DNA of 64,000 bases from Ascidiella aspersa (lineage: Eukaryota): positions 20,646,001 through 20,710,000 of the forward strand of contig OZ004609.1 of the NCBI GenBank assembly GCA_963924565.1, in the 5' to 3' direction. The notes below the pieces were generated by a model that saw nothing but the letters and a program-made list of their open reading frames with translations, did not search any database and had not been told where the DNA came from. The translations under genes were made by a program, and so were the position numbers. Position 1 is the stretch's first letter, and the number at the start of each line of letters is the position of its first letter. Shown in pieces: positions 23,754-62,700 of the stretch.

Positions 23754-26700
23754 GTAAGTTCACGACAAGAGCCGTACAAGTCACTCGGCGTGCCGTGCGT
23801 ATTTCACACCCTTTACAGTTTCACGTTAGTGTTGTTATGTCCCCCTTTTTGCCGCAAAGCACGAAATTTGTGGCAGCCACGCATTCCACGCATGCTGTTA
23901 AATGAGCGTCGCTCGAGTGAGGTCCTTGTTATGTGCATACAAGATTATACGTTGATCGTGCGGATCACATGGCCGCAAGTGCACTTACTGTTGTTCGCTC
24001 TTTTCTTCCGTGAATGCTACTGGTCTATAGACTGCATATTTCGTTAAAACTGCGCGATTTTCCAAATAGTCTTTCACGAATGCAGAAATATGTGTTTGCA
24101 GTCTTTCTTGTTGGATTTAATACTTGAATTTATTATATTAAAGTAATTACGGTAGGCTACGAACCAAGCTATATTTAGCAAGCAACGTTTAAATAATGTA
24201 TTTCCTTAACCTATTACAACACCGTTAGAAACACTTTTAGCCTAAAATTTTGACAAAACTCTTTTGCAGCAAACAATGGTTCCTTACTCTTCGTTTTTAT
24301 TTCGCTGAAATTATACCTTTCACTCTTTCTGTGGTGTGCTATAGCTTTGACATATGTTTGTTGTTTTTTATTATTTCGTTGACAGTAACGATTTTAGAGA
24401 TATATTTATCTAGGAGTATATTGTAACGTTTCTTGTGTGCACAACCGCTTTAAACTTGCAAGCAATTGCATAATGTTATGCATATTATTATTAACTGTGT
24501 TTTGCTGTGTTACACCCCCAAACATTTTATCGCCGCGCAAGAGGTTTTAATAATTATATTCACACAAATAAACTTGAGGCGTAATGCTTTACATTTGTAT
24601 ACATCGAAAAAAACACGATGATTTAATATATATCCACGTGGTGGAGCTAATAAGTTGTGGAATTTAGGAAACCTCGCAAAACGGCGCATGACATGTGGTG
24701 AACATCCCTTATCTAAGTACTTGAAAACAGAGTTGTTTCAAATGTTTAGCTGTAATAAAAATACATATCCTTCTAGCCTTTGAATGTTTAACGCTTTGTT
24801 CTTTACTTGAACCACCACCTATTAATATTATGTGCATAGTACTTCTATTTTTCTTATTCATATTCAACCCGTTCGTCATAAAATTGAAGTACACTATTGC
24901 ATGACTGTGGAAAGTCATATACGTGGAACGCAGCAAACCGAAGTGTATATGCAAATGCCGAAATCAGACTTTTGTGTGCTGGGTGGCACGTACAGCACAA
25001 CAGCTTAGGCCTATACGTTTTGAGTTAAAAATGCTTGCTTTGATATAAATATTGGCGTTTCCTTATCCAAGTCTTGTATGTTTTTCGGCAGTGACCGATC
25101 GACGCAATGCCCTGGGACGCGCATCGGAACGAAAGTCCCTCATGCAGGGGATCCTTAGCGTGGCAGGTGGGGGGGAGAAGCCGCCATCGTCCGAACTCAA
25201 GCAGGGAAAGCACCTACCGGAGTATCTGGGGCAGCGGGACCCGGTCTACGAGTTTCCCGAGTGCGCACACAAGCCCTTGAAGGAACCCGACGAGTACTAC
25301 ATGAAAAAGGTGTGTGTATATGCTATAGTTTAATTTAAAAGCTTAACGTAAAGTTTGCAAATCAACAGGCGGGGTATTGAAACAATTTTGATAAATATTT
25401 AAAAGCCATGAACGTTCTGTACATCAAAATATTGTTCTGTTTCAAACTTTATTTTAAACTGATTAAAGTATGAGTTATTGACAAAAACGTTTTTTATATC
25501 GTTATGTAAAGTATAGTATAACATATGCGCAAGTGGTTAACATTTTCCAAAATGTAAAACAGCCCAGACCTGATGTTGTATAACAACAAGCTAACAAATA
25601 CCGAGTTTAATCTGCTAGTAAACTCAATGGATTCGCATCTTTGCGGGCCACCAAGTCAGCAACTCTTATCATTGTCAGAGAATTTCTTACTTCAAGGCAA
25701 CAAGTCTATTTGTAAGGGTAGCGCAAAACTGTTCTGCGTACTTCAAATCTGCCTGGCTGTAGAGGTTTCCATCACAAAGAAAGTTACTATAGTATTTTAT
25801 AAAGATCCTCCCCGAAAAATCTAAAAACCGCAAAACGGTCCGCAGTGTTGTAATGACTTGAGTCAATGATTTGACTTAAGTGCACTTAAGTCAGTGTTCT
25901 CAAATGAAATGACATGACTTTGGTCTTTTGGACAAATGGCTTGACTTGGACTTAAGTCTTTTTGCCAAAAACTTAAGTTCAAATCAAGTGTTTTATTTAA
26001 ATGTTTTTTATTAAAATAATAAAAAATTGAGCTATTTATCTAGTAATTTGCTTGCTTGTTATTTCGATTTTGTTATTTTTACTTTTAGTGAATTTGACTT
26101 GCTCGCTTAATGACTTGACAGGGACTTGACTTGTTGTTTTTGCTTGTATTGGACTTAAGTTAATTTACAAATGACTTGACTTTAGACCTATAATGACTTG
26201 TTTACAACACTGAGCGATTTGCCATCTTTCATTGGCGACAAAATAAAACTTGTTAGAATTTTTTACTTGTGGACCTGTCTTAAAATTGTAAAGAAAACAC
26301 TAACGCATAATATAGTTTCGAGTCGACTGCAGTACACTATACAACACCGATCCGATCTACACACAGGGCGCGAGAAATACAAAACCGTCCAACACTAAAA
26401 TGATATAGTAATAGCTGACTGGCAATGACGCATTAAACATTGAAAACACGCTATGTTTTAAAAGCAGATTAAACGTGGAATCCAATGTAAAAAAAGACAA
26501 AAGGAAGTGTCAACATAACGAATAAACGAAAATCAGTGATGCTGCGATAAAAGGCTAAGTTGGCGTCACCAGTGTTTGATTGAGACACGCTAAAGACCAA
26601 ACCACAATTGCTGACCCGGAAATTGAAAGGAAATTTAAAAATCTCGCAGACGGAATTTACAGTCGCTTTCCCACACTTTGTCTCCAGCCTGAATTCGATT

Positions 26701-41700: not shown

Positions 41701-44700
41701 GGCCTGTTGCTGCTTATGACTACAATAATGCAGCCCTATAATTTCAATTTTGTGGTTATCCAAACAGGCTCCGATAACGCACTAAGAAAAACTAAAAAGT
41801 GAATACATTTTTGTTATGTAATTTGTTTTAAAGTATTATTATTCAAAAACTTTTGTTTGGTGTTCCGCGAAATTATTTTAATGCATAAAGTGTTCCGTAG
41901 CTCAACAAAGGTTAAAAAAGACTTGAACGACACTCATTCAGGTACATTATTTTGACCTTCCGACAACCCTCTCTTTTTTAGATTGGATTATTGACAGCAC
42001 AATCGGCCTAAAAACTCTTCGTGGCTTAAAAAAAGGCAATACATCGTTAACAAAAGCTACAACTTGGTCATGTATTTTGCAGCTTTGCAGAATTTTGCGA
42101 TGCTTAACCCCCTAAAAAAATTAATTTAATTGTTTTACTGAAAAGAGACAGTCCGCGATTTTAACATGAACACATTTCACAGCAAATGTTAGTAAAGCGA
42201 AATTATCTAACTTGTTCTTTGCTTGCTTCAATTTGTAGGCAATATACCTAAATTGCTAGTGCTAAAATCGACCAAACCAATTTATTTTGATTCAATGACA
42301 TATTTTTGATTCGATAAGTGTTGCTTTTTGTAAAATTGGTTCCGTTATGGGTAGCTTGTGTTCTCACATCTTGTTATTCGTGCAGATCTAAGGGCGATCG
42401 TAAAGGCTTTGTTGCACTCGATCCGAGCGCTGAAGGACGCCATTCTCCTCACCGTCTTCGTCGTGTCGGTCTTCGCGCTCATCGGATACCAGCTCTTTCA
42501 CGGCACCTTGCGGCAAAAGTGTATGCGCATTCCGGGCACGCTCGAGCTGGCGCCGGACGCCATGTATCTGGCCACATCGGGCCCGAATTTGGGCGCTCCG
42601 GAAACGCCCGAGGCGCTTTTCGCCGGATTCAGGACGCTCGCCGAGTTTGGCTCCAACACAAGCGCCGTTCCGGACACGAATTTTGTACCTATTTACGCTA
42701 CCGCGAGTGCCTTAGAACGCGACTGGGCCTGCAGCAAGCGATTGCAGTTACCCACCGCCGACAGGTCGGACTGGAGCCAGGCTGACGCCACCTTCATGGC
42801 TGATCTGACGAACGCTGCTAACACAACGTACTTTAACGGCAGTGGGTGGACGGCCAGCGATAACGCGTCTGCCGTTTTAAATTACAGCCAGTGCTTTGCC
42901 ACTGGTGAAACACAGCTCGCCCTTTTGCCGCTCGCGTCACTGCTGTGGATCTCAGGTATTGCGCAAGCAAATCGTAACGCCAGCGACATGATCAACGTTA
43001 CCGTGACGTATCAAGTGGCTGCTGTACCTTGCCTGGCCGAAGCAGCTTACTACAGCAACATTAGCTTGGGCCTGGGCGATCGGGTATACAATAGCTCGAA
43101 ACTGGATTTTAATTCGACCAGCTCGGACTTGGATTACGTGCAGTCGACTCTGCTGTACTGGGATCGGCACTTGCGCATGTTTGCTTTTCGGCGTTACGTC
43201 ATACTTTTTCGGATCGTGACGTCACGAGGCGCCAAGAGCTCCGATTTTGTGTATCTATCGGAAAAGAGTGAAGACTCGCTGAGCAACGAAGAACGAAGGG
43301 ACTGGTGCGAGGACAACGCCACTTACTGTCTGTCAGAACCAGCCACCGGGAATTTTTACTACCCAGGATCACCGAACCGTCCAAATCCCGAACCTGTTTA
43401 TTGTGCCATCGAAGAAAAGTAAGACAACTCGTAGAGTTTCGTCATTATTTAATACGTGCGTCAAGCGCCTTGTTTACTTTTCAATAATGTTTTATCGTAA
43501 AAGTTTTTTCATACATTTGTTATTTGATGGTATAATTTATTTTTTTAGTTAAAAATATTTTCGAAAATTTATGTAACTTTTGTTCAAACTAAGTGGTTAA
43601 GCCGCAATGCGAGTTTTTGATCAAATATTTCTCAATACTCACAAAAAAAGAATATATTTATGTTCATCAATCCTAGTTTTGTACAATACAATAGAATTGA
43701 AATCAAATATCAATTTTATTTCTTAGCAATATGTTCTCCAATGAAATAACCAACCACGGGGGACGTTGAATTTTTACTACCAATAATTTAATGTAAAAAA
43801 AACTTAAAAAAAACAACTTTGTATTATTATATGCAGCGATATATGTCCGCTTGGTTACAAGTGCATGATCGGCGGAGCAAATCCGGACTTCGGTTACACA
43901 AGTTTCGATCATTTTTTCCTTTCCTTTCTAACCTCCTTCCGCTTGGTGGCACTTGATGCTTGGGGCCGACTTTACTATCTGGTAAGATTAAAGTCATAAA
44001 AAAGGTTCAAAATAAAAGTCATCGAAGATAAACTTACAACCCAAATACCTGAGAATATTCTCGTGTATCATTTTGCATTGATAGACTCATTATATTCTTG
44101 CTACTTTACAGTAAGCATATAACATCCGGCATAGACAGAACAACTGTACAAGAGGTGCGCCGTTTAAACAGCCAACCATAAACTTAACTATATAGTTATC
44201 GATGCTCTAAACGTGTGGTTTCAAAACTTAACAACAGTTTGTTGAAAGATTCCTGAAAACGTGATTGTTTGGTCCAATCAATTATTAGGTGATTTCCAAA
44301 CAGCGTGTATTTCGTTCAATTATTTCTATAAAAAAACGCCGACGCAATCTTGTGAACTAACCACAATTTACTATGTGCCACTTTACGCAGACACTGCACA
44401 CAATTGGGAAAACTTATGCGATATTTTACGTGGTGGTAGTGCTTCTTGGTTCCTACTATCTTGTAAACCTCATTTTGGCTGTGGTATACATGTCCTACGA
44501 GGAACAGCACGCCGCTGTAGAAGTGGAGGAATTGGTGAGATTAGGTTTTCCGTTTGTGGAGTATATATGTTGTAGGTATAATATTCGTACAAAGGCGAGG
44601 ACAACTCAGTAGTGTAAAGCCTGATTCACTGTAAAATCACGTAAATAAAAATCAATTTTAAAGCTAAGCTTTGAATAAACGTGGCTTTATTTAGAGATAT

Positions 44701-47700
44701 ATTCCACAATATTTAAGCTTAGATATATCGGTAATATATTTCGCTCTATATTGTTAGTTTTTTTTATGAAATTCTTGTAACAAAATTTCGACATTTTTGT
44801 TATACAGGAAGCAAAAGAACGCGAAGAGAATGAAGTAAGTTTCGTTATTAATATGTCAAATATCTATATAATAGTTTGGGCTGTGTATGTTGTATTTGTG
44901 ATATATGTTATGCTAAATTTAAATCAAGTCTTTGGCTCTGCAATAAATGTTTTTGACTTTTACAGAAGTATATAGCATCTCATTTTAAGCATTCTTACAC
45001 ATCACAACAATTTAAAATGAAACAACCAGAAATAACCTGTTTTACGCGTAAAAATTATTACTCCAGTAATTGGGTAAAGTCAAATCATCCTAAAACACCA
45101 AACAAAAGTGCACTCAAGTCAAGTTGGTCTTGATTTTAAAAAAAAACTGTGTTCTGCCGAAAGCTTGAAGATGCGCGCGAAGACGACCTGGTGAGCATCC
45201 ACTGCGACAACGACGATATCGGAAGCAGCGCAAGTGACGTGGAGCGCGGAAGGGGAAGGGTCGGATTGATTACGACATCGCTGACGTCATACGAGACCCG
45301 GGTGTCTGGCGGCGAGACCACCGGGGGGCCGTTCAGCTTCCGGGACTCCCGGCGCCGGCGCTGGCTCGCGTCGCGACGCTCCAGGGCCACCTCGACTAGA
45401 AGCTCGGTTTTCGAAGAAGACGACGGAGCATGGGAGCGGAGGACTACGGCGGGATCGATTCGATACAAGGGATCGGTCAGGAGGAACCGGAATATGTCAA
45501 CGCTTGATCCGAGGTCAAATAAAAGTTGATATTTTAAGCCAGTGCTTTTCAACTGGGTGTATTGTACACCGCGTACCACATTGGTGGGGTGTACTGGGAT
45601 GTACAATATACCACATTACAATAAGCCTATATGATCACACTGTTTTAAGCGACGTATACAATACGTATAACCGCCGATACAAGGGTAATAATTTTAGATC
45701 CGATAAGATACCAAACTCACACAGACATAGCAGCCATGGCGTGGTTTGCCAATTTTTCCGAGTTTGGTAAAATAGCTAGTAGGCCAAGTTTTCAAAAGCC
45801 AGATCACATTTAAGCATATTAACCTGAAAACGTTACGTTTGCTATTTGGTATCGGATACATAAGCCTACTTTTTGCCCAAAATATGGGTATAGTTTACAA
45901 CATAAAATACTGGGTATTAGACGGTACTTAGACATTCCTATTTGCAAATCAATCATTTCAATAAAACATTTATGCAGTTCTGCTCAACCGAGTTCGGACT
46001 GCTGTTCCGACGACTGCCACGACAGAACGCCCAACACCAAGCGTAAAAGAAAGAGGAGATCGCGCGCGTGGAAGAAGCGAGAGCATCACACGAGCGTGAA
46101 CTCGAAGAACTCGAGCCTTACCAGGCTCTCGACAGAGGCTCTGGAGAGCGATCGAACAAAGCTCACAGAGGTCCGTTCGAGCTCGCCCACCATCCAACTT
46201 GTGGTAACGGCCGCTGACAATGAGACACCAGAGAAGCTGCCTCAAGTTGTGGGCGACCTAGTCCCAAACTGCTCCAACAATTTTCTCAGCATCGAGCAGG
46301 CATTATGGAATTCCCCCGGTGTCGCTTCGATGTCAGCCGACTCATTCTCGGACTACTCGTGTCGGCTTTGTGACTCACAGGCAACGTCGTTCAGCAATGG
46401 GAGATGCAGCTGTGCAGGACTGACAGGTTGCTGTTGTGCTTTTTTATTTGCTCAAAACGATGTGCAAATCGGTAACTATATTTAACAGAGGCGGCATGGT
46501 CATACAAACACACTCATAAACTCCTATTAAAAAGACACTAGCTATAAACAGGGTCATGTTCACAATTAGTACACTTTAAGAGTACTGAAAAACGTTTTTA
46601 AATATTCATTTAATTATTTTACTTTTTACCGGATTATAAACTAATGTTTTAGACTTAGTAATCTTGGATTAATTGTTCTCTCCAAACACGTAAACTGTAT
46701 CTGTTAGAATTAAATAGTTGCGAGTGGTAAACTACTCAACCGATGGTAACCCTGGCTATAAGTATTAATATAAAGGATTATACAAATATATATTGTCTTA
46801 ACAAAATAGTGACAATTCAAAGATAATATATATTCCTGCCAGAACGATTTGTATAAAACGTGACCAATGCATTTGCCAGTGCTTCCTCGCTTACTTATTC
46901 AATCGTAGTTCTTTGCGCATACACCGCCATATCTACAACTTACCTTTCAGGTTCCCGCAACAGCAGTAATCTTCAAGTGCCAATTTTCTTCGAAGAACGC
47001 CGCCTCAGTGAAACTTCGTCGCTGGATGAGGGCCAACAAGTTTCTCATCAAGTAAGAGCTCGTATAGCGGTCATCGTCTGTAAATTGTCGTTTGTCCTCT
47101 GAATATACTTCTTTTGTTATAAACACAGGTGGTCGAAGCAGAGGTAAACCATTTGGCCCCCAGCGAGGTGGACGTATTTGCCTCACCTACACCAGACAAA
47201 GGTTTAACAATACCAGCTGGCACAAACTGTTCGCCTAACCTTCTTCTTCCTCCTTCTTGCTGTAACGAAATCAGAGGAAGAGGAGGAGATGAACTCTCTA
47301 TTCCCAACTCACCCATCTTTCTTCCTAACAATAAGTACAACGGTGAGTAGGTGATTTCCAAACATTATACAGTTGGTTAAACGAGTGACAAAACTGATAA
47401 CCAAAATTTTTATTCAAAATCTGATCTTCTAACTGGTATCTCGCATCGGATCAAACGTGGTCAGTATTTTTGCAAACCGTTCCAGGTCGTCAAACCAAGC
47501 GGCGTATATCGTAATACGAAAAATATTTTCAATAAAAAAATGACGTGAAATTTAACACTGTTACTTGATAATCAACGCTGTCGCATCACAGACATATACA
47601 GAAAAAGGCCAAATGTTTACTAAAAACACCAAACGTAGCAAATAATTTTTTAAATCAGAAAACGCAACGACGCCACTACTCTCTCCCCTTCCGAGTCCTG

Positions 47701-50700
47701 CGTTAACAGGGTCAGTTGTGTCTAGTCCTCGCAGTCGCCTCTACAAGCGAAAATCGTCGCTCTCCAAGGAAAGGATACGCATCATCCAACTACAGGTATA
47801 AAGTGTTATTTCAAAGTTCTGTTGGTGTATTAATGACACCAATCAGGTCCTCCACACACATTGCGGTTTTAAGTAGCAACATTCTATGGCTGATCTTATA
47901 AAGGCAATTTCAATTTATTTTCAGGAAAGTGATGACCAGTTTTGCGACGAAGATGACGAAATTACACCCGTACCGAGTGAGCAAACCGTTTTAATGTGTC
48001 GTTTAAAAAGTTAAACTTGTAAAACCTTTTGAAAATTGTTACCTTAAAAAGCATGTTATTTATTAATCAGTTAGATATAGTTGTTCGTAACTTTTTTTCA
48101 AATTATTTAATAATCGAAGGGTTGTGTTATTTTCTTTGCTTAAAAACTCGTATCGGGGTTATCCTTTTGTCATCGCCGTATTGCGCCCGATTTTGCTTTT
48201 AAAATACATTGAGTAAAAAAATCATTTTCTAATGCGACGTGCCATTTCTGAAAAGCCACCGAGAAGACAAGGAAGAAAAAAGTTGTGCGAAAGCAAACGG
48301 CGCAGAGAGTTCGACATTTCTGCGATATTTTCCTTGACTACTTTGCTTTATGGTCTTGCTGTCCACCACGATGGAAGGTAGAAAACGAAAAATATATCGC
48401 AGTGTGTTTACATTATTTCTATAACACTGTAAAAGGTTGCATTGTGTAAGCTTCTGAGGCGAATGTATATCGTACGGCTATAACAGTGGTTCTTACCTGG
48501 GATGCCGCGGCACTCTATAGGGTGCTTCTTAAAACAATTTTTTTGTGTACGATAAGCTTCTTGTTATAATCTTTGTGTACGATTAAAGTGCCAAAAATTA
48601 AAAATGTTGTTTAGCTATTCTGCACATTTAATGTGCTGTTCCAATCTCGTTTATTGTAACGTTACATTTAAAGTTAACTTTAGCAAAAATACGAGCAAGT
48701 GCGCCGCTAGGTATTTATAATTTCCGTAGGGTGTCGCAAGCTAAAAAAGGTTGCGAAACACTGGGCCATAACCACGTTTCTTTGTACAGTTATTTACGTG
48801 TCTTACATTTCTCTCAAACAGGGCTTCCAACGAATGGTGGAGAACATTGTACTGAATCCCTTCACCGATCTTTTTATCACCCTCTGCATCGCGCTCAACA
48901 CTCTCTTCATGTGCCTCGAGCGGCATCCAATGGAGATAGGGTTCGAACTTATGCTGGAACGAGCGAATTTGGTAGGTGGGCTTTCTCTCACTCCATCGTC
49001 GAATGTTTTCCCAGTTTAACCTGAAAAACAAGCCTAGTTGTAATGTGAAATTATCTTTATATAAAAAAGTATCATTAAAAACTTCAATTAAACTTTTTTG
49101 CAAGACGTGACTTTGCTCTTTTTTACCGAAACTCCAAACAGGTTTCAAAACAACTTTCCTAAGCTATTTATTTCCAAAAAAAAATTTATCATAGGCTGCT
49201 GGAATGTACAAATTGTCTTATTCACTTGGACAAAAGATTATTGCTCTGCTATTAATTTACATCTCCGCTCTATTAAACCATCACCAAACCACTTCAACAA
49301 AGGACTGAAATCTCTCTATACTTAGTGTTAATAAAACGCACCAGTTACCGTAGCTTTGCAGTTCACCCTACTTCTATATTGTGAGGCTACGTATAAGACA
49401 TCTCAATATTTTCTGCAGTTTTTCACCATTGTCTTCACGGTGGAGATGGTGTTAAAGATTGTCGGTCTGACTCCTTTTCATTACTTGGCGGAGCGTTGGA
49501 ATGTCTTCGACGCAGTAGTGGTCTTCTTCAGTTGCCTTGAACTACTTCTTAAATCCATGAACGGACTTTCTGTGCTGCGCGCATTTCGATTAGTGAGTAC
49601 AAATTTCCAAAAGATAAAACGTACTGATTAACGTACAATTGTTTTTTTGGTTTCATAGCCTTTAATGTTGAATATGTATGTTTAAAAAGCAAAATTACAA
49701 AGCGTTTGACAGCATACCACAGTTTTAATAAATTTCTGTTGCTCTGTATCCTTTCTGCCAACACAAAGCAGCCCTGCGCACTTTAATGGTAAAAAGTTTT
49801 TGGACCCACATTGCCTTGAAGTGCATTAACATCATCACACCTTTTCAGATGCGAATTCTAAAGTTAGCCAAACAGTGGCCTGTTTTAAACAAGCTGCTGA
49901 GAACCATCGGCAAAACGATTGGCAAGCTTTGGCATCTGACAATCGTCTTCATGCTTGTGCTCTTTATTTTCGCTCTTATCGGGATGCAGCTGCTGCGACA
50001 GAGCTACATAAATCATTACGGGGTAGGTCTTGTAGCTTGTGTAGTGTTTCTATAAACATTTATAAGAGTAATATTATTGAGTCCTGTATGTCGCGGCTAC
50101 TATTAGAATCATATAAATTGTTTCTTAACACCGTTAAATCAGCCAGTAATTAAGCTTAATAGCATTTGGCTTAAAATAAATTATCACTTACCTGCAAGTC
50201 AAATTGCATAATTTTATAGAATACATGTAGGCTATGCAAAACTAACAAACTGCAACCATTACAGAGCAACCAGCCTCGTTGGAATTTTACTGACTTTCCA
50301 CACGCAGTCATGGTTGTGTTTCGAATTCAGTGTGGGGAGTGGGTCGAGAACATGTTCAACTGCCTTAACGTGGCCGAACCTGGCATCTGCATTCCGCTCT
50401 TTATTCTCGTCTATGTCATCGGAAATCTTGTGGTAAGAAGAATATAGTTTAAAGTTATTAGAAGCACTTGGGACAATACATATTCTATGCTTATAAATTG
50501 GTTGGGGATACAGTAGATAAGTTTATATAACTTCATTAGTTCTGCTTTACAGTTTTAAAAAGTTTGTCAAAAATATATGAGCAAAACATGAAATCACGAT
50601 GCTCATTTTTTTTTAACAAAAGATCAAATTAAAAAAATCAATTCTATTTTCAGATTTTAAACCTGTTTCTGGCCCTTCTTTTGAACTCCTTTAGTGGAGA

Positions 50701-53700
50701 CGCACTGCAAACCACGGAAATCGAAGGAAACAGTATTTCGGAGGCATTCAACTACTTTGTTATTTGGGGAAGAAAACGAAGAAAACAAATATCCAACATG
50801 ACGACAAACGTATGCCAGGTTGCTGCTGTTGTGATGACGTTTTGATATACTAATATGCACGCTTATTGAGTGACATAGATTTTAATTAAAAAAAAAGTAT
50901 AAATATAAGAAGGATTACGAATTGGACTAAACAAGGGGTTCTACATTGGGGTCCGTGGACTTCTTGAGGCCACGTGAACTAGTTTTATGGGTACATTGAT
51001 GACTAAATGAAATCTTGGTGTATAATTAAATAATAAATGTGTTTTTTAACAAAAAAACGATTATTTAAAGAAATGACAATAGTTCTGCTTCGCTAAAAAA
51101 AGTGTAGAACCCATGCACTAAGCCAATAGTTTCTTTTTTTTCAGTTTGGAGGTGTCGAAATACTTTTCATCCTTGTACCAATTAGTATCAATCTTTAAAA
51201 ACTCCACAGTTAATCAAAAATAACTAACATGATTTTGAATTAAATTAATAAAAGCTTTGTGTTTTTTTTGCACCTACAGTTCTAGATAATTTTGTTATTG
51301 TTTTTGTACCACTAATAGCAATTTGACTAATTGATCAAGAGAAAAACTAGACGGTTGTTGATTTTGCAATTTGTTTTAAGTAAAAAAGATGACTTCAAAG
51401 TAAGTCAAATTTGTCCCAAAGATTGAATTTGTTTCGGTGGAGAACCGTGGTCTAAAGCAGGGTGGTCTAAAGCCAGGCCCGCGGGCCACATGTGGCCCGC
51501 GAAGCACTGTTGAATTATTGTAATGCGAACAATTTGAGTTTGTATTCAAATAAACATAAGTGACCAAAGAACAGCAAGCATGTTCGGATCCAGAGGGCGA
51601 TGAGAACGCCTAATTTTTGGTATGTGTTGGGCCGGTTAGAACAGGGGTCGGCAACCTAAGGCCCGCGGGCCGGATCCGGTCCGCCAAAGTAATTCATCCG
51701 GCCCGCCGCCTCTTTGACGAATTATAGACACGAGTCCATTTTATATACTTTTTTACTTTTTAACGACGTAAGTGCAAATTTCGCGTTTGGCGCCAATGAT
51801 CTTTATACATCCGGTTCATTTACATTTTGATGCTGTCCTTTGAAAAAGATTAGTGCTTCTTTACCGTTGCATCGTGAAAGGCTGACAATTTCGTCGCGGC
51901 CAAACGGAAAACGTATTTAAAAATTTTTATTTTCGGCAATGTAATAAAACTTGCAAGAAATTTAAAAAAAATACCGGTATACCAAAAGAAACGCCACGAC
52001 TTAAGAACTTAACAAATACTGAACTACATTAACCAATAAAGTTATCGCGTTTCTTCAAAGTAGTTTTATTAAACTGTTTATTAGTAGTAACACTTTACTG
52101 CCTCCTTAAATGTAATTAAACACGATCCGAGACCCGCCTGATTCACACCATATTAATAAATTAACTGGTTTTGGCCCGCGACAAGAAAAAGGTTGTCGAC
52201 CCCTGGGTTAGAAAGTCGCAGTACGTATATAGAACTTTATAAAATGGCTGTTTTGCAAACTTATAACTTATATTTGCGTTTTGTTTTCCGTCTTTTTAAT
52301 ATGAACATAATATAAAAGTAACGACCCTAAATAAATTACTATTTTTTGTCACTTTAAAGTAAATGCACAATATACATAATTCGACTATCAGCAGCGCAGT
52401 TTTCAAGTTCCATGAACGGAACGAGCGCTTAATTACAAGCACGTCTTTCACCACCTGCAATACTAAAGGAAGATCATTTTTTCCGGGTGTTATTATGCCA
52501 CGATTAGCGCAACATCTGCGCCGAGTTGTGTGAAAGTCAGCTAAATTACAAGCTGCGGTTGAGGGGAAATAAGTTGTGTCCATTGCACACTTAGCACGTG
52601 GTCTTAGAGTATGCTTAAAGAGCATAATTTTGCGTTAACCATCATTACTTAAAAATGTAGATTTTGAAACGCGCAAGACAGTCGTCACCATTATACCTCC
52701 TTTTAAGAATCTGCTTCAGTTAAACAAATGTCGATGTTACACGAACATCGAATATTAGCGCAGAGACCGAATGGCGAGGAACATACTGCGTATAACTCGA
52801 CGTTTTTTAGAGAGAAAAAAAGAAAGAAGGTTTGACTTAGCGTTGTCAATTGTCGAATACACACTTGCTAATCAGTCAACCTAAACAAATAACGAAAGAG
52901 AAAAACTTTCAGCGTTTACGGTCGACCAAACAAAAGACGAAAAACGGCGTTTTGCGCTCGATTTTGGTTTCGCATTAAACTAAGACGCGTGACCCAATTA
53001 CTTAAAAAGCACGCCGCTTCGAACAATTTGTTACGATGACAACGAACAAAAAACGATAATATCACTTCCAAAAAGGGGGTAAGAACTCCCGCCCCCCTGG
53101 ATACGCCACTGGGGGCAATGGATAATGTATAATATTTTTAAACTTCTTAAGTAATACATATTACACTTATAAATAATACTAATAATCGCATTTTGCAATT
53201 CCAGGGGTGGGCAATTGGCCCCCCTTGCCCCCCCGTGCGGGCGCCCATGGGTCTGACCCTTTCCATTATACAATTTAATCGAGTCAAAAAACATTCTACG
53301 CTTATAACTGCGGTCTTCTTCAAAATTGAACGTTTTGTGAAATACGCAATTTTTTCGCGCTTCGCGCGAACATTTTCGCCACAACACACTTGCACTGCAC
53401 ATTTGCACATTTCGACGTTCCTAACTTTAAGAGATTGCCTTTATTTAACTCTACCGTGTCGAAAAATATGCAGTTGGGAAAATGTACGCTCATTACTTGT
53501 TCAGCCGTTCTGCTGCCGCTTGCTGATAGGAGTCCGGGGTTCTCCCAAAAAGATTATCGACAGTTTGCCGACGATGGTTGAAATGAGAAATCTAGAAAAT
53601 GCGAGCAAAAACAAGCCAAAGACCGCCGACGAAGAAGTTGCCAATGAACCCACGGGTAAAAAAAAACTTTACAGTCAAGTTTAACTGATTTTTCTTTACG

Positions 53701-56700
53701 GCACGTGTATTATTGTTAAACAATTATTATTTTTTGAATTTTAATATAGTAGCAAAATATTTTTTTTCACGCGTTGATTTTTAAATTAGAAACGCAAAAA
53801 AAATACAAGATTAAATAATTATTCTGTTAGTAAAATATACTTCATATTATCCAATCCTGGAAATATTATTTTATTTGCACGTCTTAACAACTCATTGCTG
53901 CTTGTATGTCGAATGTTGTGTCTATATACATGTTTCTGCAGAGAATCAGCCAATGTTGCTGAGTGACAAAACGGTGGCTATCACCAACGGTGATGCGGCA
54001 CCTGACAACAACAATGACATCCCTTCGAAAGAGCACCACCATCGACATCGCAGCAGACGACACCACAGACACAGGCACCACCATCGCCATCATCATCACC
54101 ACCATCACAACAGCAACCATCACAATGAGAAGCAACCGGAAGTAAACCAGAAGCAGTTGTCCAACGGAGCGGCATGCAAAGAACTGTCTTCGAAGACCAA
54201 CGGAGTTTGTCCAAAAGTTGAGACTGTTGACAGTTTTCTGAAAGTTCCAACACTTGACGTGGAAAGCAGGAAAGAAGATTGCAATAGACCCACCGTCAGA
54301 TGGGAGCGTTCCAACTCCGAAAGCGAGGTTGTGGCGCAAGTAAAGCGACAAGCGGTCTCTCGAAAGACGAGCGCGCCAGCGACGCACAGTGAACGCCAAT
54401 TGGCAGAGAACGGCATTGCAGAAGACACCGGAGCGAAACGACTTCAAGGAAAAAGGGGATGGCAAAAACTCCGCACCGCAATCTTAAATAACCCTGAGAA
54501 GGTGAGCTTGTAATAAAAATAATCACACCAAGTAATTAATGAAATCACATGTAAGTTGGTCCAAAAAACCTGTTAAAAAGGTACCTTATGTTGAGCGCTA
54601 GAATAGCACAAAACTGGTTGTTTTATCTTGTCAATAGATGCAGCAAATGAAGAACGAAATCATCGAACCGAAGGAAGAGGAAAAAGATCCCGAAGAAACG
54701 GAAGAATTAAAAGTACCGTAGTTACAGTGGCTTTTTTGTATAACTTTTGTGCACCGATACATTTGATTTTATTTGACAAACATCATACACAACAACTTGT
54801 AGAACTACACGCTCAGAATGTCGTGTTTAATTTGCTGTACAGTTATTATATTTTTGATTTTTACTACATGCCTGTAATTATGTTAAATATAGGGTTATTT
54901 TTGTCACCGGTCCTGCATACCCAACCTTTAATTATTGTCCTATACGTATAAAATCTTTGAACGACATGTTTACTTTCCACAGACAAAGAAAATGGAGATT
55001 TGCCTTTCCTGTTTTCCCAACGAACCTTTGACAACCGGGTATTGGGCAACATTCCGCGGAACCGCCCATAAAATTGTCGTTCATCGCCACTTCGACAATC
55101 TTGTCATATTTTGCATTCTTCTCAGCAGTGCCACACTGGTATGCTGAACTGTAAAATCCTATAGTTAAACGAATCATGCTCACAGTGTTGGTTTTAAGTG
55201 TTGTTTTATGATATATATATATGTATATTGGATCTTATACGGCAAGTTAATGTATGGTTTGGCCACCCGATAGTAACTTTGTATAGCGACGTATTAACTA
55301 CAGGGAATAATAACCGTGAATTCACTACATGATTAAATAACATAATTGTTGACGGCGTAAAGGGCGATTATACCTCCGATACTTCGGTTGTATTGTAAAG
55401 TAGTGCAATGAAAATAGTTTACGAAAAGTGCTATCCGGTCTTCGTCCATTTTTTGCTATATTCGAAATGAAACGTCTTCGTTAACCGGTGATAGGCATTG
55501 GAGGACGTCTACCTTCATACGCGACCAACTATGCAACGAGTTGTACAAGCTATCGACATTTTCTGCTGCGTGTTCTTCACTCTCGAAATGCTCATTAAGT
55601 GGGCTGGATATGGCTTCAAATTTTACTTCACTAACGCCTGGTGCTGCCTTGACTTTGTCATCGTGTTGGTGAGTAACACTTCGCTGTTAGTAAAACTAAA
55701 TGGTGGTTGCAATATAATTAGTTTGAAGAACTTTTGCTAGTAACACCTAATCTTTATATTAAGAGATACATTTTTGCACGCGGACATGTTTGTTACAATT
55801 GTGTATGTGAGTGAATTATTTTGTTTGTAAATGATTCTACTGTATTTGTACCACAGAAAAATAGTTTTTAAAATAGGTGTGTTTTGATGTTATACTGAGA
55901 CATATAAGACCTTGGCTCGCCTAGGAGAATAACATATATATTACTGTATTCATAGGCACCAAACTTTCAAAATTCCAAGGCGCTATCTTCTAACCAGTGC
56001 AAAATATTTTAATAATTACATAAAAAATGTGAGCGCTTAAACAACAGCTTTGCGCTGTTGCATGTTGTCACTGAAACAAACTATTTCATCTTATATAACT
56101 TTTTTATAGCGACTTGTTCCATGGCCTCGTGCCTATACGGGAAGTCAGGAAACTTTTAAACACTTATGCTGAACTAAAACTGTGCTACAGGAATTAATTT
56201 TGTACACTTATTGATAACTTTGTCGAATTCCAGGGCATTTTGAAGCCCTGTCAGAAATCCGGGGTCCAACGCTCTGCACACCACCGTTTGGCGCCTATGA
56301 CTGTATCATCTTTATCTATAGAAACATTTATTTCCCTCAGATTTCTATACTCAACCAAGCACTGGGTTCGAATAAAGATGTCGATCTAAGTGCATTGCGA
56401 GTTTTGCGCACGTTTCGCGCTTTAAGGCCGCTTCGGGCCCTCTCGAGATTCGAGGGAATGAAGGTGAGATTATATGTTAAATGCACATTATACACTTAAA
56501 TATACATATACCAGAATATACAGAAAAAATATTATTTTAATTACCATGTTAACACTCCTGATGCACAGTTTGCATATCTTTTAGTGTAGAACTTTCTAAT
56601 TCGATTCGTTCTAGATCGTTGTCGACGCGTTAATTCGAGCTGTACCGTCCATCGGTCACGTGTTCATGGTGTGTGTGATGTTCTGGTTGATATTTAGGTA

Positions 56701-59700
56701 AGACAGAGACAATATATCTGTGTACGAGTATAAGTTTCATGTACAGCAATACCTAAAATCATTAAAAAACGTACTAGAAATTTTGTGTTTAGAACCATTT
56801 GACTTCTGAGCAACTGTGTAATTTTCCTATTCTGTCTTGCTTTGCAGCATCTTGGGCGTCAACCTGTTCGCCGGCCGCTTTGGCCGGTGCGTATCCCTTC
56901 CCACCGGGGACATTTTGCCCAGGCGTTGGCCCGACGACACGAACAACACGCTGCCCAGCCTGGCCCAGCAGTGTTCACCCAACAACACTGAGCTGCTGCG
57001 ATATTTAGGCGGCGAAATAACCTCAGTAATGGTGAACCCGGCTGTCGTACTTCCGTCGGTAAGCAACCGGACGGAATGTGACAACTGCGCCCGATGGTAA
57101 GATCCTATTCGTTTTATACGGTCCTTACACAATAAACAGCCATAATACTTTCAAAGAGACAACTCTAAAATCATTCAGTTGCAGAACAAAATAGGGATGT
57201 CTGATACTTGCGATACCTACACTCTTTTTGACAAAAAATATCGCGAAACGATACCAAATGACGTCATTAATAAACTCAAACAAGCAGGGCAGTTAAAATA
57301 GTTGTTTGTGGTGGTAATGTTTTCCAGGTTATTTGGCAAAAAAATGATAAGGGTTAAGAAATCTAGTTACTTCCAGTTGTTGACCTATAGTTTTTGATTA
57401 ATTTACCTTGCAAAATCGCTACGTTGGATTGCAAGTCATGGCTCAAATGCATATTAATTCGGTACCTAGCCCACTTTATGAAGTCTAAAAACACTGTCTA
57501 ATGTTATGTTGTAAGTTTTAATTTATTTAGAAACAATAAACATTAAGGCGACCATGCTAACAAAATACTATTATTTTTAATATGCAAACAAGAGTGAATT
57601 GTGCACGATACCTGATCTTTTTTCCAGGTTAAATTCGACAGCAATTGACTGGCAGGTTCCTAGCGTGAACTTCGACAGCGTCATGCGAGGTTACCTTGTT
57701 CTCATGCAAGTACGTGGAATACCAGAGTTTTACTATTTTAATATAGTATAAGAATGTAGAACGAAAGACCGGTGACTGTGATATTCTATTGTTTAATCTC
57801 AATACATATATGGTTGGTATACATAAAACAAGTCTCTTTCCATAGGTTTGCTTCTGAATAACTATATAGCATTCTAACAGTGTTGTACAAATAGAAAAGA
57901 AGCCAATGGTTTTAAAAGACACTGTACGATTGAAATACAAATCAGCAAAAGAAAACTTGGGTTTTGCAGGTTGCCACATTTAACGGTTGGCTCGAAATCA
58001 TGGAAAGTGCAATCGATATTACTGGAAAGGAGCAGCAACCTTCCTACGAGCATTCTTTCTTTAATTACGCTTACTTCTGCGTTTTTATCGTGTTTGGAGC
58101 CTTTTTCTCGCTCAATCTGTTCATCGGAGTAATTATCGACAACTTTAATCAGCAGAAAATCAAGTCACAAGGTAGCGCAAGTCTGTCATGTCTCTTGAAA
58201 AAAAAAATCAAATTGCTTATCATGCTGTTAAACGAATAACACAAAGATCAACTGGGTCATTTCTGTAAAAAAAAAGAGAAAATAATATTCAATTTAAAAG
58301 TTAACTTACAATGCTAAACACATTAAAATCTTGTATAACGTAAAACGTAGTATTCACAGTTTTGTCTCTTGTGATACTTTGTTTGCAACTCCGCTTTTAA
58401 TATGTAAGTGCAGTTGTACACTTCTCTATGCTTTTTGTTAACTCTTATTAAGCAGTCCTAACTACGAAGCATCGGCGTGTAACATCAATCAGCAAAGTGC
58501 ACTAGTGCGTAAAACGCTAATTTGTAAGTTTGGAGCTACACTAAAAGAGGAGGTTAAAAATTCTATTCAAGGTATATAACGATTTTGACTCAGGAATAAA
58601 ACACTTTTTTTTGGTTTGTGTTTGAAAGGAAGTAGTTGGCACAATAACTTTTTACTTTTTTTCAGTGGAACTATCAACAGAATCAGTTGTAGAAAACGGT
58701 TGGTCGTATTAAACTTAAGTTTTCACAGGTGCTTTTGGTGGTAGTGGTATCTGGTGCTTTGTTGTCAAAATTTCGCTCAAAAAATAATTTAATTATTCTT
58801 GCGAAAATCGAAAATCCACAAAGCAATGTTTTTGTTGATTTTGGTGATCTTTTTCTGTAGAATTTAAATATTCGTTGAACATGTTTTCTTAATTTAGAAT
58901 CATAATTAGGTTTTGTAGAGATATATTACAGTATGTTGCTATATGCGTGATACATTAAATATAATTACAGCTGAAAATGTATTGAAATATATATCCATTT
59001 TAATGACAGCTATGTTTATTACATAGGAAATGCAGACGGCGTTTTTCTTACTGAGGAACAGCGTCGATATTACAACGCCATGAAACGTATGACGTCAAAA
59101 ACGCCCAAGAAACCAATTCCCAGACCCCAAAGTCGAATCGCGAACAAGGTAAATTATTGTTTGGTTGCAAACAAAGGTTATCGGAAACAACCCCAAGGTT
59201 TTTTAAACACGATCACTTGCGCTGTCGTCAGCTAATTAGACTGGGTATGACGTAAAGCTATGAGACGTTATTATTATTAATATTATTTTGCTTCCAAACA
59301 ATCCAGGGTCATTTTTTTCTAGGTTTAAATAAATTACTTATAAAGTATTATTTGTAAGTAGAAAAATTCAATTAAAAATGTTATTTTTGTTTTAAAATGT
59401 ATTTTTATTGCTTTCTTATCGTTTTATTGAATCTTTAAACAATAACACTGTGTATTCCTTGCTTATTGTTAGATTTGAAAACCATACTCAACCGCTGCAA
59501 TGTGTTATTCGTGTGATTCCATGTTATTGTACACTACAGCTTTATGACGTGGTGACATCACGAAAGTTCGAGATCGGCGTGATGGCAGTGATAATGTTAA
59601 ATCTGGTTGTGATGGCGGTAGAGCACCACACCATGTCCAAAGAAATGGCGCAGTTGTTGCAATACTTCAATTTGGGCTTTATAAGTAAGATATACACCAT

Positions 59701-62700
59701 CCGAATAGGCAATATGCTTGGCGTTACATTACCGGTAAACCACAAACAAAAACACGTCAAATAGCGGCAAAATGTGTCACCATCAAATGGTGGCCTACAA
59801 CTAAGCCTAAAGCGTACTACGTTACGTGACGATAAATCTAAACTAAAACAAATATATCTGAAGTTACAATACTGTAAATTTTCGCTCCTGTTTTATCCAT
59901 ATTTTTTTAATTAAAAAATCGTGCACTTGTTGGTAAAGATTTAATAAAGATTTACTTTTGTTATACGCAGCTTTGTTCGTGATAGAAGCCACGTTAAAGC
60001 TGATTGGCCTGCGCTTCTACTATTTCACGGTGCCCTGGAATGTTTTCGACTTTTTCGTGGTTGTTATTTCTCTAATAGGTAAGATAACATCAAATCTAGC
60101 TTTTTGATTTATTCCTAGCCACTGTCTGGTTATGCTAACAACGAATAGCAACAACATAGTGACCAACTTCTTTCTCTATAAGTTTTGGTTACCTAAATAC
60201 TTCGCATTACTATAATATATGTACGACCAATCGACCATGTCTAATTTATTAAAATGTTGATATCACTGTTGATTGCATGGTATTGCACGTCGTAGCTCTC
60301 GCATGAGATCCGGAAACAAATTTACTCTTCCTACGTGTCGGACGTTTGCAATTCCTGTCATATTTCACGACCAAAAGCACGCAACACAAACCAATTTAAA
60401 AAATATAATATAGAAACACTCAGCACGCATGTATCGATCATTTTTCAATTATTCTTTATTGTTGTATTATTTTTTAACTTTGAAATTACGATGCACCATT
60501 TAATAAACTAAACTTGATAGAACGCTTAGGAAACATTGCACTTTTTTATTAAATATTTAATTATACTTCATACTTGGAATTGTAAGCGTTTCTTGATTTG
60601 CCTGCTGGTAACAATACGCATGGCACCTTGGCGAGAAACAAATCCCTATAGAATCAAAGCACGTTCGAATTGAATAACATAGTCGTGTCAACTTGTGTTT
60701 GTATGTGCTTGTGCGCGCGCGCGCGTGTGTGTAGGCTGTAGTCTCGTCCCAGTCTGTCCGCGCACTTCCTTAAACCTTGCTCGCGCGCACCGCCCAATGC
60801 ACTGGCAGCACACACACAAGCACGCTTCAGGCCACCTGCACCCCTTTGCGTTTTCTCCTTTTTCACTCACCGACTCCTCATCTATCCCTCGTGCTCACTC
60901 TGACACGTCTAGTGAACTGCCTGTCCACAGCGACCGGTCTGAACGACGTCATGTCCCAGTACTTCGTCCAGCCAACGCTCTTCCGCATCATTCGACTCTT
61001 TCGCGTCACGCGCATCCTTCGACTCATCCGCGAGGCAAAGGTTAGTTGCGTATGCGCGTTTTCGCTACCGTTGTACGGTTCTATACTTCGTGTTTATTCC
61101 GATACTGATACCTAATATTTTATGCACAAAAGGGTTGTCCTATCCAATACCATTCGATACGCAAACGTAACTTCTCTGTGTTGTTAATCGCAAAACTGCT
61201 CTGTCGCAAAAAAATCTTTGTAACTTTAATTGTTAATATGCTATTTTATAAATAAAAATATTTTTGAAAGTGGAGAGCGCTTAGTTAGATTGAAAACCAT
61301 GGCTAATAGGTTAGGGTTATTTTGGTATCGGGTCTGTACCGATACCATTGTAGTATCGGATGAAAACCGATCTTAGAACTTGGCATCGAAAATAGCGCAC
61401 TAGTATGATCTTAAAGGGGGGTTATTAAATAAAATTTAATTTAAACGTACCTTGTGTAATCCGTTTGTTAAACATGACAAAATCAAAATTTAACTCTATA
61501 ATTCACCTTAGGAAATATTAAGCAGTATATATATGTTTTATTACTAAAAATGAATTTTAAAACATATGTCTATACTTTCAGTATTTGACAGAAGTGCAGC
61601 GAAATATTATCGGGTTTGGTGCTTTAATAAATTATAGTTTAATGATAGCAAACTTAAATATTTGCTACCGACTGATACTACAGCGTTTTAAAGAAAATAA
61701 ACTAGTTCCCTTCTTATTGTCGCCATAGGGGATTCGAACGCTTTTATTCGCTCTCATGATGTCACTTCCCGCTCTCTTCAACATCGGCTGTCTTCTCTTT
61801 CTCTTCATGTTTATATACGCCATCATTGGGATGTCGCAATTCGCCGACGTGCAGAAGCTTGCCGGTATCGACGACATGCTCAACTTCGAGACATTTCCCA
61901 ACGCGTTCCTCGTGCTGTTTCAGGTGTGCAAAAGAGTGACCCGAGTTACCATATTCGCCATTATACGATGTACAAACATTAACGTCTGCGCGCTTATCCT
62001 ATGAAACTCACTATGTCAGAAGAAGGATTTTGATTTCATAACTGTTTGTAAGCATACAACTTTAATTAGTTTCTTTTTTTGAAATTACCTGTTTTCGTTA
62101 GCTGTACTTTTCATACCATCTCATTAGGGAATCTTTTGGGACCGCCAAACCCTGAAAAGTCCAACAAATTTCTATAGATCTTACAACTTGCATTAACACG
62201 CTTATATAGGTTTCGACCTCGGAAGGATGGGATCGCTTCATCGAACCTATTTTGCGGGACCGACCTCCCTACTGCGACTTACACCCGCCAGATGGGGGTA
62301 GATCTAACTGTGGAAACGCAACCATAGGTGAGCGTAGTACTGGATAGTAATGAGTGATAACGTCTTTAAATGTGTTTGTTAGTTGAAATGTGCGTTCGGG
62401 GTTTTAACAACCTTGAAGTGATAGAACTGAATTTTGTTACTATTTTTCATAATACACATTTTCTAAAAAGTCTTGTTTCACCACTAGAGTACTATAACCA
62501 CCACGGAAAGTATGTTACTATGAATTGTGGCAAAATATTGTATTGAAATTGACATACGTTAGTCACATACTTTGCTGTCATTTTTATTTTAAATAGAATA
62601 ATAATTGAAGTAAATAAGTTTAATAGCCTACCTAGACACAGGAAACCTTACATTGTAGCAGGATAGTGAAATGTCAAATTCTGGCGCCCAAGAAAGTTTG

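What the first reader, a model, noticed from the sequence alone, without database searches (positions are those of the whole stretch)
43955..62224. Nav-family channel with a D/E/N/E selectivity filter, probably not Na+-selective
Seen in sequence: the four inner-ring positions are D (GAT 43955-57, ALDAW), E (GAG 50337-39, CGEW), N (AAC 57982-84, TFNGW) and E (GAA 62222-24, TSEGW). Established: canonical Nav1 uses DEKA, the DIII Lys is the main determinant of Na+ selectivity and Ca2+ exclusion, and K-to-E/A-to-E substitutions make Nav channels Ca2+-permeable. Nav2/BSC1 channels use DEEA, cnidarian Nav2 variants DKEA, Cav EEEE/EEDD and NALCN EEKE/EKEE. From memory, tunicate-specific Nav1 paralogs with D/E/x/E signatures have been described, but I do not recall an Asn at DIII. 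Inference: a Nav1 scaffold with all four S4 sensors intact has been converted into a Ca2+-permeable or non-selective voltage-gated cation channel, an independent route back towards Cav-like permeation.
Basis: partly seen in the sequence, partly recalled or inferred. Interest (0 to 1): 0.92.

Follow-up and report, generated by a model that had tools for sequence, protein, structure and literature searches.

The report
Sea-squirt Nav1b channel with DENE filter
This is the intact sea-squirt copy of a known tunicate sodium-channel paralog (Nav1b) whose pore ring reads D/E/N/E instead of D/E/K/A, so it probably no longer selects for sodium; the same ring is already present in public protein models of two other sea squirts, and no member has been tested functionally.

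Summary
GAT 43955-57, GAG 50337-39, AAC 57982-84 and GAA 62222-24 are in frame. They align without gaps to the D, E, K and A of the Nav1 DEKA ring.

The gene is an intact multi-exon, four-domain channel. I checked 27 splice junctions (26 GT, one GC donor, all AG) and found no stops. All four S4 arrays are present.

In an ML tree it pairs with Phallusia mammillata A0A6F9DSM5 (100/100). Both sit in a 100/100 clade with the Ciona paralog published as CiNav1b (D/E/T/E; Kawai 2021). That clade lies inside Nav1, not Nav2.

Filter rings in the clade:
- Styela: DEKE
- Clavelina, Phallusia, this window: DENE
- Ciona (two species): DETE
- marine metagenome relatives: DEM-

The DIV Glu arose once; the DIII site then drifted. 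Asn shared by three genera makes an assembly error very unlikely.

Asn at DIII has precedents. Human NaX (DENA) is non-selective and blocked by Ca2+. Aphid Nav carries DENS, and a DENA mutant of DmNav1 loses Na+ selectivity. Loss of Na+ selectivity is therefore likely, while Ca2+ permeation is open.

Verdict: a new member of a known, uncharacterised paralog group. The scan had not found this on other DNA.

The parts
25067..25309 (+). N-terminal coding exon; aligns to residues 2-85 of the Phallusia Nav1b protein. No ATG at the equivalent start, so the true start is probably further upstream.
   Evidence: tblastn (69% identity, E 2e-38); junction to 38925
38925..39136 (+). Exon: cytoplasmic N-terminus and DI S1
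   Evidence: GTAAGT donor
40267..40395 (+). Exon: DI S2-S3
41329..41450 (+). Exon: DI S4 (R-x-x-R-x-x-R-x-x-K array at 41399-41431)
42386..43418 (+). 1033-nt exon: DI S5 plus a very long extracellular S5-P loop; the loop is shared by Nav1b orthologs
   Evidence: Pfam Ion_trans at its start
43837..43981 (+). Exon: DI P-loop. Ring Asp GAT at 43955-57. The TTX aromatic position is Ala and the outer-ring Glu is Gly (L-D-A-W-G-R, 43952-43969).
44391..44534 (+). Exon: DI S6 (3' end not refined)
   Evidence: 98% identity to Phallusia
45161..48374 (+). I-II linker coding segments, colinear with Phallusia Nav1b. Approximate blocks: 45161-45520, 45976-46413, 46959-47054, 47682-47771, 48270-48374. Splice sites not refined.
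48828..48971 (+). Exon: DII S1
49419..49592 (+). Exon: DII S2-S3 and the start of S4
   Evidence: (Ion_trans 3e-14)
49849..50022 (+). Exon: rest of DII S4, S4-S5 and S5
50265..50432 (+). Exon: DII P-loop and S6. Ring Glu GAG at 50337-39; outer-ring Glu kept (C-G-E-W-V-E-N).
50654..54483 (+). End of DII S6 (50654-50809) and II-III linker blocks (53478-53612; 53974-54483 with a His-rich tract). No ankyrin-binding motif.
54980..55138 (+). Exon: DIII S1 (5' end not refined)
55495..55668 (+). Exon: DIII S2-S3
56341..56463 (+). Exon: DIII S4 (six Arg at every third position, 56395-56448)
56615..57096 (+). Two exons (56615-56697 and 56848-57096): DIII S4-S5, S5 and extracellular loop
57628..57709 (+). 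Exon: DIII loop before the P-helix
57970..58180 (+). Exon: DIII P-loop and S6. Ring Asn AAC at 57982-84 in place of the Nav1 Lys.
59027..59148 (+). Exon: III-IV linker. The inactivation latch reads V-F-L (G-V-F-L-T at 59038-59052) instead of I-F-M; flanking T-E-E-Q-x-x-Y-Y-N-A-M-K is kept.
59540..60078 (+). Two exons (59540-59684 and 59971-60078): DIV S1 and S2-S3
60931..61040 (+). Exon: DIV S4 (R array at 60981-61031)
   Evidence: 100% identity to Phallusia
61729..61923 (+). Exon: DIV S5
62210..62327 (+). Exon: DIV P-loop. Ring Glu GAA at 62222-24 in place of the Nav1 Ala; outer-ring Asp kept.
62951..63096 (+). Exon: DIV S6. The gene continues beyond the window: C-terminal exons at L003 460-651, 4492-4659 (IQ-like motif) and about 5044-5172.

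Best explanation
The window carries the ortholog, in a phlebobranch ascidian close to Phallusia, of the tunicate-specific Nav1 paralog published as CiNav1b. It is an intact, conserved four-domain voltage-gated channel. It has four full S4 sensors and a hydrophobic V-F-L latch in place of I-F-M. It has no ankyrin-binding motif and a very long DI extracellular loop. Its inner pore ring is Asp/Glu/Asn/Glu. Without the DIII Lys, and with three carboxylates in the ring, the most likely behaviour is a depolarisation-activated cation channel that no longer discriminates Na+ from K+. It should interact strongly with Ca2+, either conducting it or being blocked by it. It is probably insensitive to tetrodotoxin. 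The same genome keeps a canonical DEKA Nav1a with I-F-M for ordinary spikes. Shown here: the sequence, gene structure, orthology, and the distribution of filter states across species. Inferred: everything about permeation, gating and toxin sensitivity.
For: Codons and alignment to the DEKA ring. Intact gene: 27 refined splice junctions (26 GT, one GC donor, all AG) with open frames; colinear with the 2483-aa Phallusia protein through both linkers and the C-terminus; Ion_trans hits on single exons. Orthology: ML tree pairs the window with Phallusia Nav1b at 100/100, 84% identity over 1319 columns; the Nav1b clade is 100/100 and nested in tunicate-plus-vertebrate (Olfactores) Nav1 at 100/100, away from Nav2. 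Filter table: Ciona x2 DETE (as published in PMC8192821), Phallusia and Clavelina DENE, Styela DEKE, P0007 DEM-; one further Nav1b-like fragment with Asn, P0429. DIV A->E counts as one change on the tree. S4 arrays intact, latch V-F-L, DI aromatic and DI outer-ring Glu lost. No ankyrin motif in the window or in any Nav1b, but present in Nav1a. The own genome has Nav1a = DEKA with I-F-M at C9, a ?EKA paralog at C1 and a Nav2-type DIII Glu at C2. Functional analogies from papers: DmNav1 with DENA shifts Vrev from 71 to 19 mV and is 38-fold less TTX-sensitive (PMC4332693). NaX-QTT (DENA) does not discriminate Na+, K+, Cs+ or Li+ and is blocked by Ca2+ (PMC8931054). Human Nav1.2 K1422E has PNa:PK:PCa of about 1:0.7:0.8 (PMC9433730). 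NvNav2.1 (DEEA) conducts Ca2+ (PMC3809514).
Against: No member of the Nav1b group has been expressed or recorded, so permeation is untested. Selectivity can depend on P-loop residues outside the ring: NvNav2.5 needs its whole P-loops (PMC3809514). NaX with Asn at DIII does not pass Ca2+. The DIII site varies (K, N, T, M) within the clade. This could mean relaxed constraint there rather than a tuned new selectivity. The tree does not include the third ascidian paralog (Nav1c) and does not resolve Nav1b against Nav1a and the vertebrates.
Confidence: 0.7

Rival explanations
1. The channel is still mainly Na+-selective. Other remodelled P-loop residues (for example the conserved Arg after the DI ring, or the changed outer ring G/E/E/D) compensate for the missing Lys, as in cnidarian Nav2.5, where selectivity depends on the whole P-loops.
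For: PMC3809514 shows ring residues alone do not set selectivity in Nav2.5. All Nav1b P-loops are strongly conserved and differ from Nav1a at many sites.
Against: No Lys or Arg sits at any ring position. Every tested Nav1 background that lost the DIII Lys lost Na+ selectivity (DmNav1 DENA/DENS, hNav1.2 K1422E, NaX-QTT).
Confidence: 0.15
2. It is a NaX-like protein: a channel-derived sensor or leak channel that does not open with voltage on its own and needs unknown partners.
For: It shares Asn at DIII with NaX. The latch is altered and the ankyrin motif is missing. NaX gave no currents until its gate was engineered (PMC8931054).
Against: All four S4 arrays keep their full charge pattern, unlike NaX as described in PMC8931054. 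It is not in the vertebrate clade.
Confidence: 0.1
3. The Asn codon is an assembly or sequencing error or a rare allele (true state Lys, giving DEKE), or the gene is a decaying pseudogene.
For: AAC is one base from AAA/AAG. Styela Nav1b has Lys. Reads could not be inspected.
Against: The identical T-F-N-G-W motif occurs in the Phallusia and Clavelina orthologs and in two metagenome fragments. All modelled exons are open with recognisable splice sites (26 GT and one GC donor), and transmembrane exons are up to 100% identical to Phallusia.
Confidence: 0.03

Closest known systems
CiNav1b of Ciona intestinalis (Kawai et al. 2021, J Biol Chem, PMC8192821); C. savignyi H2ZPU3
   Same: Same orthology group (100/100 clade). 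Glu at DIV, no Lys at DIII, no ankyrin-binding motif, weakly conserved latch (G-V-F-L-T in both), long DI loop, intact S4s.
   Different: DIII residue is Thr in Ciona and Asn here. The paper gives one sentence on the filter and no functional data.
Phallusia mammillata A0A6F9DSM5 and the Clavelina lepadiformis RefSeq model ('sodium channel protein type 3 subunit alpha-like')
   Same: Identical D/E/N/E ring. For Phallusia the flanking motifs are also identical in all four P-loops, with 84% identity over conserved columns.
   Different: Different species. These are unannotated database models, and I found no paper that mentions a DENE ring.
Styela clava Nav1b model (DEKE)
   Same: Same clade; same DIV Glu and remodelled DI vestibule.
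   Different: Keeps the DIII Lys, so it looks like the intermediate state.
Human NaX / SCN7A (DENA; Noland et al. 2022, PMC8931054)
   Same: Nav1-derived channel with Asn replacing the DIII Lys. [quoted passage not shown]
   Different: NaX has Ala at DIV, reduced S4 charges and is voltage-insensitive. It is a vertebrate paralog, so the Asn is convergent. Ca2+ blocks NaX-QTT but does not permeate it.
Aphid Nav1 (DENS; Amey et al. 2015, PMC4332693)
   Same: Asn at DIII and a non-aromatic DI residue. The DENA and DENS mutants of DmNav1 lose Na+ selectivity and TTX sensitivity.
   Different: Ser rather than Glu at DIV; a heterodimeric two-gene channel; an insect lineage.
Nav2 / DSC1 / BSC1 / NvNav2.1 (DEEA) and human Nav1.2 K1422E
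   Same: Three carboxylates and no Lys in the ring; these conduct Ca2+ and do not discriminate Na+ from K+ (PMC3809514, PMC9433730).
   Different: The third carboxylate is at DIII, not DIV. Nav2 is a separate, older clade.

Membership tests
Four-domain voltage-gated cation channel (4 x Ion_trans, PF00520) | Four homologous repeats, each with S1-S6 and a P-loop | tested here: met
   Exons of all four domains are colinear with 1800-2990-aa Nav proteins. Ion_trans hits on single exons of DI-DIV and five stretches in the ortholog P0198.
Four-domain voltage-gated cation channel (4 x Ion_trans, PF00520) | Positively charged S4 arrays in every domain | tested here: met
   Arrays align residue for residue with Nav1.3 and CiNav1a.
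Bilaterian Nav1 | Phylogenetic placement inside Nav1, apart from Nav2 | tested here: met
   Nested in the tunicate-plus-vertebrate (Olfactores) Nav1 clade at 100/100, with Nav2 as outgroup.
Bilaterian Nav1 | D/E/K/A selectivity ring | tested here: not met
   The ring is D/E/N/E. It is a Nav1 by descent but not by filter.
Bilaterian Nav1 | [quoted passage not shown] | tested here: inconclusive
   V-F-L at the same place with conserved flanks. Whether it supports fast inactivation is unknown.
Chordate neuronal Nav1 (Nav1a / vertebrate type) | Ankyrin-binding motif in the II-III linker | tested here: not met
   The motif was found in CiNav1a, Phallusia Nav1a and Nav1.3. It was absent in three frames of 50401-55000 and in all Nav1b proteins.
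Tunicate Nav1b paralog group (CiNav1b) | Clade with CiNav1b | tested here: met
   100/100 support; nearest row is Phallusia Nav1b.
Tunicate Nav1b paralog group (CiNav1b) | Altered ring with Glu at DIV; weak latch; no ankyrin motif (as described in PMC8192821) | tested here: met
   Searches compared.
Nav2 (DSC1/BSC1/TuNa2, DEEA) | Placement in the Nav2 clade; Glu at DIII and Ala at DIV | tested here: not met
   Tree; ring. The genome's Nav2-type DIII exon is elsewhere, at C2:15.36 Mb.
NaX (SCN7A) | DENA ring, reduced S4 charges, vertebrate Nav1 subclade | tested here: not met
   Only the DIII Asn is shared. S4s are intact and the gene is not within the vertebrates.
Cav (EEEE/EEDD) | Four acidic ring residues; Cav clade | tested here: not met
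   DI is Asp and DIII is Asn. PDB hits rank Nav1 above Cav.
Functional class: non-selective or Ca2+-permeable voltage-gated cation channel | Measured PNa/PK/PCa | not testable with these tools
   Inference from mutants and NaX only.

The most novel reading that the evidence does not exclude
The ascidian Nav1b group is a chordate Nav1 that has gone back, step by step, from Na+ selectivity to a Ca2+-permeable, non-selective voltage-gated cation channel. DIV Ala->Glu came first (DEKE, as in Styela). The DIII Lys was then lost (DENE here, DETE in Ciona, Met in pelagic relatives). Living species would preserve the intermediates of a selectivity-filter transition that has so far been studied only with engineered mutants.
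Probability: 0.4. Interest if true: 0.7.

Novelty: new member of a known kind. Interest (0 to 1): 0.45.

Why it matters
The DIII lysine is the textbook determinant of Na+ selectivity. Natural Nav1-lineage channels that dispense with it are few (NaX, aphid Nav, CiNav1b), and none with a native voltage sensor has been characterised. The ascidian Nav1b orthologs offer a ready-made natural series (DEKE, DENE, DETE, DEM-) on one conserved scaffold. The oocyte system already established for CiNav1a could be used to ask how much each ring residue contributes. It could also show whether chordates evolved a Nav1-derived Ca2+ entry pathway. For this window specifically the value is modest. It adds one more species with the DENE state and shows the state is real and conserved.

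Tried and rejected
- **Alternative P-loop exons that could swap the filter:** none found.
- **Apparent second DIV P-loop in the genome's Nav1a (I-S-T-C-L-G-W):** this is intron read-through at a differently placed splice site, not an alternative exon.
- **Literature:** no DENE sodium channel, no DEKE paper in the searchable library, and no paper other than Kawai 2021 names CiNav1b. Favre et al. 1996 (PMC1233800) is not held. It and Heinemann 1992 are cited only through other papers.
- **Independent copy of the window's own exon:** the last protein search with the 74-aa DIII exon found none.
- **Tree method:** the first tree run with the mixture model did not finish, so LG+G4 was used.
- **Nav1c:** no Nav1c protein was obtained, so that paralog is missing from the tree.
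- **Spliced model:** it was joined only inside scripts, for alignment and the tree. It was not sent to any search or folding tool; searches were made exon by exon by reference.


Full report
**Observation.** Each lies in an open exon frame on the + strand.
- The assignment to the selectivity ring does not depend on judgement.
- phmmer against PDB chains aligns the DIII exon without gaps to human Nav1.4. This puts Asn on the Lys of V-A-T-F-K-G-W.
- The DIV exon aligns to Nav1.5, putting Glu on the Ala of T-T-S-A-G-W-D.
- In a 30-sequence alignment read at the DEKA columns of a Nav1.3, the window gives DENE, every Nav1a and vertebrate row gives DEKA where a residue is present, and Nav2 rows give DEEA.

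**The gene.** The window is G000:C3:20646001-20710000 of a 308.6-Mb assembly.
- I took the closest protein (P0198) as guide and refined 27 exon junctions. All have AG acceptors and open frames; 26 donors are GT and one chosen donor (64651) is GC.
- Both cytoplasmic linkers and the C-terminus are colinear with that protein.
- The gene starts no later than 25067 and runs past the window end into L003, which holds the C-terminal exons with an IQ-like motif.
- Single exons from all four domains hit Pfam Ion_trans.
- All four S4 arrays are intact.
- The III-IV latch reads V-F-L where Nav1 has I-F-M, with conserved flanks.
- In DI the TTX aromatic position is Ala and the outer-ring Glu is Gly.
- The II-III linker has no ankyrin-binding motif. 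The motif is readily found in CiNav1a, Phallusia Nav1a and Nav1.3.
- No P-loop exon has a duplicate that could be spliced in as an alternative.

**Relatives.** A full-library phmmer search with the 74-aa DIII exon and a search with its best full-length hit gave these closest proteins:

| Species / protein | ID | Ring |
|---|---|---|
| Ciona savignyi H2ZPU3 | P0001 | DETE |
| C. intestinalis | P0195 | DETE |
| Phallusia mammillata A0A6F9DSM5 | P0198 | DENE |
| Clavelina lepadiformis | P0199 | DENE |
| Styela clava | P0200 | DEKE |
| unnamed marine sequence | P0007 | DEM- |
| this window | core exons joined in script | DENE |

- Phallusia is the nearest, at 63% identity over all tblastn blocks and up to 100% in transmembrane exons.
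- Kawai et al. 2021 (PMC8192821) describe four Ciona genes: CiNav1a (DEKA), CiNav1b with an altered filter D/E/T/E, CiNav1c and CiNav2. They state that 1b and 1c lack the ankyrin motif and have a weakly conserved latch.
- The Ciona proteins found here carry exactly D/E/T/E, so this is the CiNav1b group.
- A second search gave the Nav1a set, including CiNav1a and Halocynthia TuNa1.

**Tree.** An ML tree (LG+G4, 30 rows, 1575 columns) gave these placements:
- The window's core exons pair with Phallusia Nav1b at 100/100.
- Both sit in a 100/100 clade of six ascidian Nav1b sequences plus P0007, on a long stem (0.63).
- That clade lies in a 100/100 clade with ascidian Nav1a and vertebrate Nav1, that is, tunicate-plus-vertebrate (Olfactores) Nav1.
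- The three-way relation among Nav1b, Nav1a and the vertebrates is unresolved.
- Nav2 is the outgroup.

**Filter states across the clade.**
- On the tree, DIV Ala->Glu counts as a single change at the Nav1b stem.
- The DIII site is Lys in Styela, Asn in three genera, Thr in Ciona and Met in P0007.
- Fragments from marine metagenomes add two more clusters with Met (P0009, P0016), one Clavelina-like copy with Asn (P0002) and one further Nav1b-like fragment with Asn (P0429).
- The simplest history is DEKA -> DEKE -> DENE -> DETE, with a separate change to Met. Each step is one nucleotide from the previous codon class. This is my inference; only the window's AAC was seen as DNA.
- Asn with identical flanking residues in independent assemblies of other genera makes an AAC miscall here very unlikely. 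Direct read evidence could not be obtained.

**The rest of the family in this genome.** DIII-type exons occur at four loci:
- C9:19.77-19.80 Mb is a canonical Nav1a: D, E, K, A with I-F-M.
- C1:13.0 Mb has E, K, A; its DI was not located. It is probably Nav1c.
- C2:15.36 Mb has Glu at DIII (Nav2 type).
- The window is the fourth.

This matches the four genes of Ciona. The animal therefore has an ordinary Na+ channel alongside this one.

**Likely function.** This part is inference.
- Putting DENA into Drosophila Nav1 moves the reversal potential from 71 to 19 mV. It produces tail currents taken as Ca2+ entry and lowers TTX sensitivity 38-fold (PMC4332693).
- Human NaX has a natural DENA ring. 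Once its gate is opened it does not discriminate Na+, K+, Cs+ or Li+, and it is blocked but not permeated by Ca2+ (PMC8931054).
- Human Nav1.2 K1422E (DEEA) has PNa:PK:PCa of about 1:0.7:0.8 (PMC9433730).
- Nematostella Nav2.1 (DEEA) conducts Ca2+ (PMC3809514).
- DENE has no ring lysine and the same net charge as DEEA.
- I therefore put loss of Na+/K+ discrimination at about 0.8 and measurable Ca2+ permeation at about 0.5.
- With intact S4s and a hydrophobic latch, the channel is most likely voltage-gated and inactivating.
- With Ala at the DI aromatic site, Gly at the DI outer ring and no DIII Lys, it is most likely TTX-insensitive.
- The same cnidarian paper shows that residues outside the ring can decide selectivity, so a retained Na+ preference cannot be excluded.

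**Novelty.**
- The paralog group and its unusual filter are published for Ciona, in one sentence and without recordings.
- The DENE ring itself is present in public protein models of two other ascidians.
- I found no paper that mentions DENE.
- What this window adds is a third genus with DENE.
- The comparison made here also adds the pattern of an invariant DIV Glu with a drifting DIII residue across the group.
- This is a new member of a known, functionally uncharacterised kind.

**Limits.**
There is therefore no read, transcript or ortholog-codon evidence.
- The spliced model was joined only inside scripts, for alignment and the tree. It was not sent to any search or folding tool; all searches used single exons by reference or database proteins.
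- Linker exon boundaries and the true start codon are not refined.
- Nav1c is not in the tree.

Noticed in passing
window 63567-64000: The last ~430 bases of the window, in the intron after the DIV S6 exon, belong to a dispersed repeat. It has at least 40 copies at 85-95% identity on many contigs of the genome.
   Followed up: no
window 42386-43418: The very long DI S5-P extracellular loop encoded by one 1033-nt exon is shared by Nav1b orthologs (aligns to Phallusia residues 236-559 at 46% identity; also Ciona and Clavelina). It is a feature of the paralog group, not of this species.
   Followed up: partly
window 53974-54126: A His-rich tract (runs of H and R) in the II-III linker is conserved in position with a similar tract in the Phallusia ortholog.
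   Followed up: no
window 25049-25309: The exon matching the N-terminus of the orthologs has no in-frame ATG where the Phallusia protein starts, so the real start probably lies in an upstream exon.
   Followed up: partly
proteins P0007, P0009, P0016 (marine metagenome / metatranscriptome): Nav1b-like sequences with Met at the DIII ring position. P0016 carries a G-V-F-L-T latch; P0007's latch is diverged and P0009 ends before it. They may come from pelagic tunicates; their origin could not be looked up.
   Followed up: partly
protein cluster P0088 (Logan/ENA, 16 members): A Nav2 (60E)-like fragment with Asn at the DIII ring position (Q-A-T-F-N-G-W-E-E). This would be another independent loss of the DIII charge, in a non-tunicate lineage.
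   Followed up: no
protein P0053 and its cluster (Branchiostoma, three species and one hybrid): An amphioxus Nav paralog with a D/D/Q/A ring, conserved across the Branchiostoma entries in the cluster.
   Followed up: no
G000:C9:19769996-19804716 (-), loci L009-L011: The genome's canonical Nav1a (DEKA, I-F-M). Its DIV P-loop intron lies after T-S-A-G, not before the P-loop as in Nav1b, so intron positions differ between the paralogs.
   Followed up: partly
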